A stretch of DNA of 64,000 bases from Malacoraja senta (Eukaryota): assembly GCA_038087875.1 (NCBI GenBank), contig CM075987.1:5208001-5272000 (forward strand), read 5' to 3'. Shown here piece by piece: positions 56,910 to 61,769 of this stretch. Position 1 is the first letter of the stretch; every line of letters starts with the position of its first letter. A program made the translations under genes and the position numbers. The notes beneath the pieces were generated by a model. The model had not been told where the DNA came from and made no database searches. It saw only the letters and a program-made list of their open reading frames with translations.

Positions 56910-57122
56910 GTGTAGGAAGGAACCGCAGATGCTAGTCTAAACCGAAGATAGATACAAAATGCTGGAGTAACAGCGGGCCAGGCAGCTTCATTGGAGAGAA
57001 GGAATGGGTGACGTTTCGGGTAGAGTCTGAAGAAAGGTCTCGACCCGAAACGTCACCCATTCCTTCTCTCCACAGGTGCTGCCTGTCCCGCTGAGTTCCT
57101 CCAGCATTTTGTGTCTATCCTC
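56910..57122. mobile_element. PLE-derived fold-back element
   Basis: Inverted arms; flanks gtatggactgtg/gtgtggactgtg. Confidence 0.75.
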
Positions 57123-60353: not shown

Positions 60354-60750
60354 GGATAGCACAGTGGCAGAGCGGTAGAGCTGCTACCTCAGAGCGCCAG
60401 AGACCCGGATTCGATCCTGACTACAGCTGTGGAGTTTGTATGTTCTCCCGGTGAACGCGTGGGTTTCCTCCAGCTGCTCCGGGTTCCTTCCACATCCCAA
60501 AGACGTGCAGGTTTGCAGGTGAGTTGGCTTATGTAAATTGCCCCTAGTATGCAAGATGAGAATGTGGGATAACATCAAACTAGTAGACACAAAATGCTGG
60601 AGTAACTCAGCGGGACAGGCAGCATCTCTGGAAAAAAGGAATGGGTCGTGACCCTTCTCCCTAAACATAGAACTATCGATGGTTGGTGTGGATTGGGTGG
60701 GCCAGATTGCCTATTACCACGCTGTATCTCAAAACAAAACTAGACTAAAC
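60354..60750 (+). mobile_element. V-SINE split by a PLE fragment
   Basis: Family match. Confidence 0.8.
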
Positions 60751-60983
60751 AGAGGGCTTATATGGATAGGTTATGTGAATGGGCTGGAACACGATGGAAT
60801 ATAATATGGACAAATGAAAGATTATCCATTCTGCTTCACAAAGTAGAAAAGCAAAGTATATTTTAATAGGTGAGAGGCTAAATGGCATTGTGTCCTCGCA
60901 GTCAAATCACTGAAAATTCTCACGCAGATACGATAATTATTCAGGAAGACAAATGGTAGGTTGGCCTTTATTACAGGGGGATT

Positions 60984-61068
60984 GGGGATCATGACAGAAG
61001 CCTCCTCGTGGCGATCCCCGGAAACGACACGATGCCCTCTGTGACGCGTCGGGCGATCAATTCTGTCA
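60984..61068 (+). ncRNA. HDV/CPEB3-like self-cleaving ribozyme fold (predicted)
   Basis: P1 GGGGATC/GATCCCC; J1/2 A; P2 TGACAGAA/TTCTGTCA; P3 GCC/GGC; L3 TCCTCGT; P1.1 CC/GG; P4 CGACACG/CGCGTCG (one A-C mismatch); J4/2 GGCGATCAA. Activity untested. Confidence 0.85.
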
Positions 61069-61131
61069 ACGTGTTGGACGACGACGGAAGCCAACAGCAA
61101 GCTACACGTCGTCTGACACACGAGCGAATGA
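60984..61131 (+). mobile_element. 148-bp non-autonomous retroelement headed by an HDV-like ribozyme
   Basis: Flanked by the direct repeat ACAGGGGGATT (60973-60983 and 61132-61142). Removing the insert plus one copy restores the host CR1 frame KTNGRLAFITGGFEKDKDLVLQLYR. 17 CpG in 148 nt. Confidence 0.85.
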
Positions 61132-61290
61132 ACAGGGGGATTTGAAAAAGATAAAGACCTCGTATTGCAGTTATATAGGATTGGTCTCCATACGTCAGGA
61201 TATACATGCAACTGAAGGAGTGCAATGAAGGTCCATCCAGATGGACTTATGGTATTTGTCGTGCAAGAAAAAGAAAAAGAAAAAGGTTCA

Positions 61291-61769
61291 TGGGCCTGTC
61301 CATGAACCTTAGGCGATTTTTTAGGCAACTACAGGCGACTAGGCTGTCACCACATGGTCGCCGGGTTGTCGCCTGTATGGTCGTGAGTCGTCTCCTCTGT
61401 CGCCCAAAGAATCGCAGTGTTTTTCTGGTCGCCGCTGGATTTTGAAATGTTGAAAACTTTTCGGCGACAGTCGGCTTGACGTCAATGAGCGTAGCTTGAC
61501 TTCTCCTGACGTAGGTTGTCGCCAGGATGACGTAGGTTGTCGCCGATGCTGACTTCCATGAATTCCATTGGGGCTACCTCCGTCAACCGGTGACTGGTAC
61601 CGACGACTGAATTGTCTTACCTTGTCGTAGCTTGACGTCGACCAGGTGGTAGATTGTTGTCGACATTGCCATAGATATTGTCGTAGGGGGGGTCCAGTCG
61701 CCGGCTTTTCGGCAACCTGCTATGACAATGACAGTCGCCGAAAAAAATCGCCTAAGTGGGACAGGCCCA
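61291..61769. mobile_element. MITE, PIF/Harbinger-like
   Basis: TIR TGGGCCTGTCC..CTTAGGCGATTTTTT; apparent TCA TSD (an AT 2-bp reading is also possible); arrays of GTCG/TGACGT. Confidence 0.8.

What the first reader, a model, noticed from the sequence alone, without database searches (positions are those of the whole stretch)
60973..61142. 148-bp mini-retroelement that begins exactly at the cleavage site of an HDV/CPEB3-like ribozyme
Seen: a CpG-rich insert (17 CpG in 148 nt) between two copies of ACAGGGGGATT; excising it restores the host CR1 reading frame. Its first 85 nt fold into the full nested double pseudoknot: P1 60984-60990/61013-61019, P2 60992-60999/61061-61068 (8 bp), P3 61000-61002/61010-61012, L3 UCCUCGU with the U/G positions of the active-site reverse wobble, P1.1 CC/GG 61004-61005/61020-61021, and P4 61025-61031/61045-61051. 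The first base after the TSD is G1, the predicted cleavage product end. Established: HDV-like ribozymes process the 5' ends of R2, RTE and trypanosome ingi/L1Tc retrotransposons, and CPEB3 has the same fold. Inference: this is a non-autonomous, ORF-free element with no tRNA-like Pol III head. It may excise itself from host read-through transcripts and be mobilised by an Ingi/Vingi- or RTE-type partner (ingi-type elements make about 11-12-bp TSDs). I do not know of such a family described in cartilaginous fish.
Basis: partly seen in the sequence, partly recalled or inferred. Interest (0 to 1): 0.92.

Follow-up and report, generated by a model that had tools for sequence, protein, structure and literature searches.

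The report
Ribozyme-headed mini retroposon, dead copy
This 148-base insert is one old, probably inactivated copy of a very abundant short jumping element of a cartilaginous fish whose front end is built like the HDV/CPEB3 self-cutting RNA, so the family most likely trims its own 5' end out of host transcripts, although cutting itself has not been shown.

Summary
A 148-nt, CpG-rich insert (60984-61131) lies between two perfect 11-bp copies of ACAGGGGGATT. Removing it restores a continuous CR1-type frame. Its first 85 nt fit the HDV double pseudoknot, and Rfam's CPEB3 model matches at 28.8 bits (E 1.4e-4), below the gathering score of 35.

It is a family, not a one-off. In eight runs from at least six coded organisms, summed contig depth rises from about 10-25 to 10^3-10^5 exactly over 60984-61131. 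Contigs with unrelated flanks break at 60983/60984 and at 61128/61133.

New here:
- The odd J4/2 is a defect of this copy. Position 61057 is T here but C in about 85-98% of family depth, which gives the canonical C-C-A-A, so this copy probably no longer cleaves.
- A third to a half of family depth has the G1·U wobble.
- The insertion is shared by two other organisms at about 4% divergence.
- The P4-containing fold fits better than the P4-less one proposed elsewhere in this scan.

Not shown: cleavage, covariation within the family, and the LINE partner. The only RNA run gave 38 reads, mostly read-through.

The kind is known (NARTc/RIME, R2 SIDEs, Vingi and RTE bipartite elements). I found no description for cartilaginous fish. 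The scan has noted this family many times elsewhere in this genome.

The parts
60973..60983 (+). left target-site duplication ACAGGGGGATT
   Evidence: identical to 61132-61142
60984..61131 (+). 148-nt ORF-less retroposon copy: ribozyme head, 3' stem-loop and short tail
   Evidence: Depth rises from about 25 to 10^4-10^5 exactly over this span. Contig flanks diverge at 60983/60984 and at 61128/61133.
60984..60990 (+). P1 5' strand; G60984 is the predicted first base of the cleavage product
   Evidence: 7/7 pairs with 61013-61019; the centroid fold recovers P1 and P3
60992..60999 (+). P2 5' strand
   Evidence: 8/8 pairs with 61061-61068; the minimum-energy fold recovers it
61000..61012 (+). P3 (GCC/GGC) closing L3 UCCUCGU; CC 61004-61005 forms P1.1
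   Evidence: read from the sequence; aligned to P3/L3 of the CPEB3 model; variants here are at most about 14% of depth in every run
61013..61021 (+). P1 3' strand (61013-61019) and P1.1 GG (61020-61021)
   Evidence: 61019 is C here and T in 33-53% of family depth, which gives G1.U. The other outcome of decay at the same CpG, 61020 G>A, is only 2-8%.
61025..61051 (+). P4 hairpin: weak, with one A.C mismatch, and 3 nt (GAC) shorter than most copies
   Evidence: z -0.06 for this copy. The majority form folds as 5 + 4 bp, z -0.4. The gap of 3 appears in most laid contigs, and the loose-end consensus begins behind 61028.
61052..61060 (+). J4/2; 61057 is the catalytic-C position, mutated to T in this copy
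   Evidence: T>C at 61057 in 98% (X1), 85% (X3), 88% (X5), 93% (X6), 90% (X25) and 95% (X11) of depth. L001 also has C. The CPEB3 model aligns its C-G-A-A to U-C-A-A here.
61061..61068 (+). P2 3' strand UUCUGUCA
   Evidence: 8/8 complement of 60992-60999; no variant reaches the listing threshold (4% in X1, X11, X25, X26; 10% in X3, X5, X6)
61071..61119 (+). 3' stem-loop with a 13-bp stem, the presumed recognition element for a LINE reverse transcriptase
   Evidence: MFE -21.7 kcal/mol, z -2.94, 0 of 200 shuffles fold as well. That it is recognised by a reverse transcriptase is inference.
61120..61131 (+). 3' tail ...ACGAGCGAATGA, short and repeat-like, with no poly(A)
   Evidence: L001 ends ...CGAACGAACG; family 3' breaks lie at 61128 and 61133
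61132..61142 (+). right target-site duplication
60870..61250 (+). decayed CR1-type LINE fragment that hosts the insertion (approximate limits)
   Evidence: The frame is restored after excision. The CR1 assignment rests on the ...LAFI.RG......V.LQLY..LVRP.LEY-type motif from my own knowledge, not on a database match.

Best explanation
This is a fossil copy of a bipartite, ORF-less, non-autonomous non-LTR retroposon family, present at roughly thousands of copies per genome.

Proposed mechanism, for source copies:
- The element has no promoter head of the tRNA, 5S or 7SL type. It is transcribed as part of longer host or read-through RNAs.
- Its first ~85 nt fold into an HDV/CPEB3-type double pseudoknot with P1, P1.1, P2, P3 and a dispensable P4.
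- That fold cleaves immediately 5' of G1. This gives a defined, structurally protected 5' end.
- The 3' stem-loop plus short tail is bound in trans by the reverse transcriptase of an APE-type LINE, most likely of the Vingi/Ingi type. The LINE copies the RNA by target-primed reverse transcription and leaves TSDs of about 11-13 bp.

The copy in this window inserted into a CR1 fragment before related species split. It has since lost the catalytic cytosine (C to T at 61057) and 3 nt of P4, so it is most likely no longer self-cleaving.

Shown here: mobility, copy number, the 5' boundary, the fit to the fold, the family's catalytic C, and the age of the copy.
Inferred: cleavage, read-through transcription, and the identity of the partner.
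For: - TSDs and restored host frame.
- Rfam CPEB3 model at 28.8 bits, E 1.4e-4. It is the only ribozyme-type match in the 64-kb window below E = 1.
- Compared with the CPEB3 consensus, all three differences in P1 and P3 are changes on both sides that keep the pair: G-C to A-U, C-G to U-A and G-C to C-G. None breaks a pair (alignment).
- In X1, X3, X5, X6, X11 and X25, depth steps up 100- to 7000-fold exactly over 60984-61131. The commonest loose ends with unrelated flanks (agreement 0.35-0.5) lie at 60983/60984 and at 61128/61133.
- An independent copy, L001 816-964, is 85% identical. It begins within 1 nt of G1 and has its own TSD, AGAGATGTTGTT.
- Position 61057 is C in about 85-98% of family depth and in L001, which gives the canonical C-N-A-A before P2.
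- At CpG 61019/61020 the change that keeps the structure (C>T, giving G1.U) is 33-53% of depth. The change that breaks P1.1 (G>A) is 2-8%.
- The 3' stem-loop has z -2.94.
- There is no tRNA-like head.
- Contigs of X5 and X6 bridge the unique left flank into the element at about 4% divergence, so the insertion is shared (records 17 and 25).
- Literature: ORF-less bipartite non-autonomous LINEs are reported only from RTE, Ingi, Vingi and R2. Three of these four clades have 5' HDV-like ribozymes (PMC5786205).
Against: - No cleavage data exist.
- The Rfam score is below the gathering threshold (28.8 against 35).
- The decayed copy L001 gives no Rfam match.
- P4 is not statistically supported.
- A helix-only descriptor occurs by chance about 0.15 times per 64-kb window.
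- In the one RNA run (X26, polyA, a different organism), 13 of about 19 reads over the head continue into upstream flank, and no excess of reads starts at G1. Those expressed copies carry L3 or P2 mutations, and only 38 reads were laid.
- Covariation within the family could not be tested, because only two full sequences could be fetched.
- Depth is summed k-mer depth of contigs and is not a true copy count.
- No LINE sharing either end was available to test.
Confidence: 0.72

Rival explanations
1. Same retroposon family and same ribozyme type, but the active fold is a minimal, P4-less HDV-like ribozyme of about 55-60 nt. Its P2 3' strand would be UCUGU at 61038-61042, as several other notes of this scan read it. 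The downstream UUCUGUCA at 61061-61068 would then not be part of the ribozyme.
For: - ACAGA 60994-60998 can pair with UCUGU 61038-61042 (5 bp).
- P4 is weak.
- Minimal P4-less HDV-like ribozymes exist (theta ribozymes, PMC10879173, listed).
- 61037-61044 is as invariant as 61061-61068.
Against: - This P2 has only 5 bp, against 8 perfect bp.
- The nucleotides before 61038 (GCCC here, GCAC in most copies) do not give C-N-R-A. The longer fold has C-C-A-A in about 85-98% of family depth.
- The CPEB3 covariance model aligns its J4/2-P2 segment CGAAUUCUGCU to 61057-61067.
- The two observed variants in the P2 5' strand (60994 A>G; A>T in L001 at the position of 60998) do not discriminate between the folds.
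Confidence: 0.12
2. The head adopts or resembles the HDV fold, but its selected role is not defining the 5' end by self-cleavage. It could be an internal Pol II promoter (as Pr77 of L1Tc is both promoter and ribozyme), a 5' cap-like protective structure, or a binding site for the LINE protein. The 5' end at G1 would then be a transcription start.
For: - In L1Tc/NARTc the same 77 nt act as promoter and ribozyme (PMC3383444).
- RNA reads show read-through rather than ends at G1.
- The head is 2-15 times deeper than the rest of the element, which suggests a module reused by several families.
Against: - The family keeps exactly the features needed for catalysis: C at 61057, the P1.1 G, the G1.U or G1-C pair and the L3 sequence.
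- A promoter function would not require the 8-bp long-range P2.
- No promoter evidence is available either.
Confidence: 0.1
3. Chance resemblance: the family is an ordinary short retroposon, and the pseudoknot is an accident of a GC- and CpG-rich sequence.
For: - The helix-only descriptor hits random sequence about 0.15 times per window.
- The Rfam score is below threshold.
- The 85-nt head is no more stable than shuffles (z -0.62).
Against: - E is 1.5e-3 for the whole window against all 4227 families.
- The fold starts on the exact first base after the TSD.
- The one non-canonical feature of this copy is canonical in the family majority, and that check is independent of how the finding was made.
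- All helix differences from CPEB3 are compensatory.
Confidence: 0.06

Closest known systems
NARTc / RIME (and SIDER) of trypanosomatids, the non-autonomous partners of L1Tc / ingi
   Same: ORF-less bipartite elements that keep the LINE's 5' end. That end is an HDV-like ribozyme (Pr77/L1TcRz) cleaving at the first nucleotide. They also keep the LINE's 3' end, are mobilised in trans, and have TSDs of about 12 bp (PMC3185411, PMC3383444, PMC4035085).
   Different: The host is a protist, not a vertebrate. They are about 260-500 bp long and have a poly(A) tail. The head has proven promoter and cleavage activity. No sequence similarity was tested here.
R2 SIDEs (short internally deleted elements) of Drosophila
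   Same: Non-autonomous elements consisting of a 5' HDV-like ribozyme plus the 3' UTR needed for TPRT. They are released from a co-transcript by self-cleavage (PMC3414825).
   Different: They are specific to rDNA sites and use a restriction-like endonuclease lineage. They have few copies, whereas this family is dispersed, has thousands of copies and makes 11-13-bp TSDs.
Bipartite non-autonomous Vingi and RTE derivatives of vertebrates (for example the Vingi-1_EE derivatives, WALLSI3, Bov-A)
   Same: Vertebrate, ORF-less, made of LINE 5' end plus 3' end, and high in copy number (PMC5786205). Other notes of this scan report Vingi-like LINEs in this genome with the same head and tail (untested here).
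   Different: A ribozyme at the 5' end has been predicted for RTE. [quoted passage not shown] At 148 nt this element is unusually small. I could not compare sequences because Repbase is not available.
Mammalian CPEB3 ribozyme (Rfam RF00622)
   Same: It is the best Rfam match. 25 of 37 bases are identical from G1 through P1', including the P2 strands CAGAA/UUCUG. All three helix differences are compensatory, and J4/2-P2 is CNAAUUCUG in both (with the family C at 61057).
   Different: CPEB3 is a single-copy, intronic, mammal-only sequence with no TSD and no retroposon body. The score here is below the gathering threshold. P4 is longer here (36 nt of insert against 19), and L3 differs at 2 of 7 positions.
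Genomic HDV ribozyme
   Same: The same nested double pseudoknot. From my memory of the HDV sequence, the P3-L3-P3' core GCCUCCUCG(C)UGGCG is nearly identical to 61000-61013.
   Different: The Rfam HDV_ribozyme model gave no match at E up to 10. P1, P2 and P4 are unrelated. HDV is the genome of a circular RNA agent, not a retroposon.

Membership tests
HDV-like (delta-fold) self-cleaving ribozyme | P1 of 6-7 bp starting at the cleavage-site G1, closed by G.U or G-C | tested here: met
   60984-60990/61013-61019 is 7/7. G1-C in this copy; G1.U in 33-53% of family depth.
HDV-like (delta-fold) self-cleaving ribozyme | 3-bp P3 closing a 7-nt L3, with a 2-bp P1.1 between L3 and the nucleotides after P1 | tested here: met
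   GCC/GGC, L3 UCCUCGU, CC 61004-61005 with GG 61020-61021. The model alignment agrees.
HDV-like (delta-fold) self-cleaving ribozyme | P2 pseudoknot helix joining J1/2 to the 3' end | tested here: met
   60992-60999/61061-61068, 8/8 Watson-Crick
HDV-like (delta-fold) self-cleaving ribozyme | catalytic cytosine in J4/2 (C75 equivalent, C-N-R-A before P2) | tested here: not met
   This copy has U-C-A-A (T at 61057). The family majority (about 85-98% of depth) and L001 have C-C-A-A. The feature is therefore met by the family and lost in this copy.
HDV-like (delta-fold) self-cleaving ribozyme | Mg2+-dependent self-cleavage 5' of G1 | not testable with these tools
   The RNA run X26 gave 38 reads and no pile-up of starts at G1, which is uninformative.
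HDV-like (delta-fold) self-cleaving ribozyme | compensatory changes in the helices among relatives | tested here: inconclusive
   Against the CPEB3 consensus there are 3 double changes and none that disrupts a pair. Within the family only two full sequences and per-position variant frequencies were available.
Rfam CPEB3_ribozyme (RF00622) | score at or above the curated gathering threshold (35 bits) | tested here: not met
   28.8 bits
Rfam CPEB3_ribozyme (RF00622) | single-copy sequence in the CPEB3 intron of mammals | tested here: not met
   It is a dispersed, high-copy repeat bounded by TSDs inside a CR1 fragment.
Bipartite ORF-less non-autonomous LINE (RIME/NARTc, SIDE or Vingi-N type) | dispersed copies with TSDs and a defined 5' end | tested here: met
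   TSDs of 11 bp here and 12 bp in L001. Flanks diverge at 60983/60984 in hundreds of contigs.
Bipartite ORF-less non-autonomous LINE (RIME/NARTc, SIDE or Vingi-N type) | no coding capacity | tested here: met
   At 148 nt, two frames are open by chance, but only one relative was found (another copy, translated antisense) and the + frame had no candidate.
Bipartite ORF-less non-autonomous LINE (RIME/NARTc, SIDE or Vingi-N type) | the 5' and 3' ends are those of an autonomous LINE in the same genome | not tested
   No LINE in the window shares either end. Other scan notes report a Vingi-like LINE with this head and tail, but I did not see those sequences.
Classical SINE | tRNA-, 5S- or 7SL-derived head with an internal Pol III promoter | tested here: not met
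   ARAGORN found no tRNA in 60800-61500. Rfam gave no tRNA, 5S or 7SL match.

The most novel reading that the evidence does not exclude
The head is truly homologous to the mammalian CPEB3 ribozyme, not merely of the same fold. The CPEB3 ribozyme would then be the exapted 5' head of an ancient vertebrate retroposon or LINE lineage of this (Vingi-like) type. That lineage is still abundant in cartilaginous fish, and the ribozyme head would be a reusable module shared by several element families.
Probability: 0.2. Interest if true: 0.85.

Novelty: new member of a known kind. Interest (0 to 1): 0.6.

Why it matters
Retroelements that free their own 5' end with an HDV-like ribozyme are established in insects (R2, RTE) and trypanosomes (L1Tc/NARTc). 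A 148-nt, promoter-less, ribozyme-headed element at thousands of copies in a vertebrate lineage would add three things:
- It would extend that strategy to jawed vertebrates.
- It would give a natural minimal template (ribozyme, stem-loop and tail) for a vertebrate APE-type reverse transcriptase. Such templates are now of practical interest for RNA-templated gene insertion.
- It would offer a concrete candidate ancestor for the orphan mammalian CPEB3 ribozyme, because the head is closer to CPEB3 than to any other Rfam ribozyme family.

This single copy matters less in itself. It is a dead copy, useful as a natural catalytic-C mutant control.

Tried and rejected
1. Fetching more copies for covariation.
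- An exact 22-mer of the most conserved core found nothing in metagenome contigs or viral contigs.
- Translating the element and searching the protein collections gave one true copy (P0001, locus L001).
- It also gave one spurious hit, P0002/L002. This is an AT-rich tandem-repeat contig with no similarity to the element.
- The + frame found no candidate.
- Covariation within the family was therefore not tested.

2. Rfam on L001 gave no match. That copy has mutations in P1 and P3.

3. In vivo cleavage. The only RNA run with raw reads (X26, another organism) laid 38 reads with no enrichment of starts at G1. This is uninformative.

4. LINE partner in the window. BLAST of the element against the window found only itself. 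All 19 other ORFs of 110 aa or more had no Pfam domain.

5. Pol III head. No tRNA was found.

6. Special protection of CpGs. This was rejected. Seventeen retained CpGs are compatible with about 4% divergence since insertion, and other copies show ordinary CpG decay of 1-9% per site and direction.

7. Microhomology between the TSD (GGGGGATT) and the element start (GGGGATC) as a junction mechanism. This was rejected as coincidence. Both copies of the motif are retained, and L001 shows nothing similar.

8. Literature. Kojima et al. 2011 on Vingi is not held, and the supplement with the Vingi 5' alignment is not held.

Full report
**What is in the sequence**

Positions 60973-60983 and 61132-61142 are identical 11-mers, ACAGGGGGATT. 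They bracket a 148-nt insert at 60984-61131. The insert is 58% G+C with 17 CpG. Its CpG o/e is 1.36, against 0.49 for the window.

Removing the insert and one repeat copy joins the flanks into an uninterrupted frame...NGRLAFITGGFEKDKDLVLQLYR.... By my own knowledge of LINE proteins this is the region just after the reverse-transcriptase domain of CR1-type elements. No database match was made for that assignment.

**The fold**

Read directly from the sequence:

| Element | Positions | Result |
|---|---|---|
| P1 | 60984-60990 / 61013-61019 | GGGGAUC/GAUCCCC, 7 of 7 |
| P2 | 60992-60999 / 61061-61068 | UGACAGAA/UUCUGUCA, 8 of 8 |
| P3 | 61000-61002 / 61010-61012 | GCC/GGC, closing L3 UCCUCGU |
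| P1.1 | 61004-61005 / 61020-61021 | CC/GG |
| P4 | 61025-61031 / 61045-61051 | one A.C mismatch |

- Nested folding recovers P1 plus P3 in the centroid, and P2 plus P3 in the minimum-energy structure. That is expected of a pseudoknot whose halves exclude each other in a nested model.
- P4 is not favoured over shuffles (z -0.06).
- Rfam's CPEB3_ribozyme model matches 60973-61067 at 28.8 bits. E is 1.4e-4 for the 6-kb search and 1.5e-3 for the whole window against all 4227 families. The gathering score is 35, so the match is below it.
- The next ribozyme-type match is the F. prausnitzii HDV model at 19.4 bits, E 3.6.
- A helix-only descriptor that I wrote finds the site, but it also hits 9 times in 60 random 64-kb windows. 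The helices alone would not be convincing.
- What makes the case is that the fold starts on the first base after the TSD, together with the sequence-level model match and the family data below.

**It is a family**

Contigs of public runs were laid on the region.

- In every run of DNA or unrecorded type (X1, X3, X5, X6, X11, X25; at least six coded organisms), summed depth is at single-copy level in the unique flanks. Examples are 24.9 in X1, 11.7 in X3, 8.9 in X5 and 16.4 in X6.
- Depth rises to 10^3-10^5 exactly between 60984 and 61131, then falls back.
- The best-supported loose ends on the left lie at 60983 and 60984. Their upstream sequences do not agree with each other (agreement 0.37-0.5).
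- On the right the loose ends lie at 61128 and 61133, again with unrelated continuations.
- Depth is not a copy count, but the order of magnitude is thousands of copies.
- One further copy was fetched through its antisense translation: L001 816-964, 85% identical. It begins within one base of G1, ends in ...CGAACGAACG, and has its own TSD, AGAGATGTTGTT.
- The element is therefore a dispersed retroposon with a fixed 5' end and TSDs of about 11-13 bp.
- It has no tRNA-like head and no coding capacity worth the name.

**What the family says about the ribozyme**

The weak point of this copy is J4/2. The CPEB3 model aligns its catalytic C-G-A-A to U-C-A-A here, a point the scan also flagged separately.

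- The family resolves this. Position 61057 is T only in this copy. It is C in 98% (X1), 85% (X3), 88% (X5), 93% (X6), 90% (X25) and 95% (X11) of depth, and also in L001.
- The family therefore carries the canonical C-C-A-A directly before the 8-bp P2. This copy has lost the cytosine that acts as the general acid in HDV-type ribozymes (established knowledge for HDV C75/C76). I expect this copy to be inactive or nearly so.
- Most copies also have three more bases (GAC) in the 5' strand of P4. With them P4 folds as 5 + 4 bp, still without statistical support.
- At CpG 61019/61020 the two possible decay products are very unequal. C>T gives the G1.U wobble typical of HDV and CPEB3 and is 33-53% of depth. 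G>A would break P1.1 and is 2-8%.
- That asymmetry fits two source lineages, G1-C and G1.U, that both keep the structure. It does not fit neutral decay. Because depth is k-mer weighted, I treat this as suggestive only.
- No variant reaches the listing threshold anywhere in 60984-61018 in X1, apart from about 2% at the L3 and P3 CpGs.

**Which architecture**

Other notes of this scan read the same family as a minimal, P4-less ribozyme of about 54 nt. In this copy that would use ACAGA 60994-60998 with UCUGU 61038-61042.

I prefer the longer fold for three reasons:
- It has 8 rather than 5 P2 pairs.
- It has a canonical C-N-A-A before P2, while the short version has GCAC or GCCC.
- The CPEB3 model aligns to it.

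The available variants do not discriminate between the folds, so the short fold stays as a rival at about 0.12.

**The rest of the element**

- 61071-61119 forms a 13-bp stem-loop that is clearly better than shuffles (-21.7 kcal/mol, z -2.94, 0 of 200).
- It is followed by a short tail, ...ACGAGCGAATGA, with no poly(A).
- By analogy with stringent-type LINE/SINE pairs, this is the likely recognition site for a reverse transcriptase (inference).

**Age and state of this copy**

- Contigs from X5 (record 17, 60717-61010) and X6 (record 25, 60717-61007) bridge the unique left flank into the element. They show 11-12 differences in about 290 nt.
- The insertion is therefore present at the orthologous place in two other organisms, at about 4% divergence, and predates their split.
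- This copy differs from the family majority at 61036, 61057, 61071, 61086, 61099 and 61105, and by the 3-nt gap.
- Its many CpGs need no special explanation at that age.

**RNA**

- The only run with raw RNA reads (X26, polyA, another organism) laid 38 reads.
- 13 of them continue into upstream flank across 60983/60984, and no excess of reads starts at G1.
- The expressed copies carry changes in L3 or P2.
- This neither supports nor refutes cleavage.

**Partner and literature**

- No LINE in the window shares either end.
- Kojima (2018, PMC5786205) states that ORF-less bipartite non-autonomous LINEs are reported only from RTE, Ingi, Vingi and R2. [quoted passage not shown] Vingi is not on that list.
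- NARTc/RIME (PMC3185411, PMC3383444, PMC4035085) and R2 SIDEs (PMC3414825) are the closest described designs.
- I found no paper in the held library that links HDV-like ribozymes with cartilaginous fish or with Vingi.
- Other notes of this scan report many more copies in this genome, and Vingi-like LINEs with the same head and tail. I could not check those sequences, so the Vingi assignment remains a lead.

**Relation to CPEB3**

- From G1 to the end of P1', 25 of 37 bases equal the CPEB3 consensus. This includes the P2 strands CAGAA and UUCUG, which the fold does not constrain.
- The three helix differences are all compensatory on both sides.
- With the family's C at 61057, the J4/2-P2 segment is CNAAUUCUG in both.
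- This is more than the fold requires but is not proof of common descent. I put homology at about 0.2.

**Verdict**

This copy is a fossil with a mutated catalytic base. The element is a new member of a known kind (ribozyme-headed bipartite non-autonomous non-LTR elements), and apparently the first such case in cartilaginous fish.

Noticed in passing
window 61290-61400 and beyond: A second, far more abundant repeat starts here, with summed contig depth up to 6.6e5 against about 25 for single copy. Many contigs extend upstream of 61308 with ...GGGCCTGTCCCA. ARAGORN finds no tRNA in it.
   Followed up: no
window 60700-60760: Another high-copy repeat ends here, with depth 1e5-3e5 in all four runs.
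   Followed up: no
window 60988-61014 versus 61024-61131: The ribozyme head has 2-15 times more summed depth than the rest of the element in every run of DNA or unrecorded type. This is the opposite of what 5' truncation gives. The head may be a module shared with other families or with the LINE partner.
   Followed up: partly
window 60977-60983: The left TSD copy GGGGATT can itself pair with the P1 3' strand 61013-61019. It would then compete with the true P1 in read-through RNA of this locus.
   Followed up: no
window 56964-57100: A palindromic hairpin is matched on both strands by the plant MIR2118 model (37 and 36 bits, gathering score 85). It is probably an inverted-repeat element rather than a miRNA.
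   Followed up: no
window 60822-61328 (- strand): A 168-aa antisense ORF runs through the element. Its only relative is the antisense translation of another copy (P0001), so it is not a gene.
   Followed up: yes
window 61258-61293: A (GAAAAA)n-like purine microsatellite lies between the CR1 fragment and the next repeat. Reads appear cut there.
   Followed up: no
window 61023-61070: Single-copy-depth contigs in several organisms lack 45-90 nt between about 61023 and 61070-61112. These are copies with P4 and P2' deleted, and are presumably dead derivatives.
   Followed up: no
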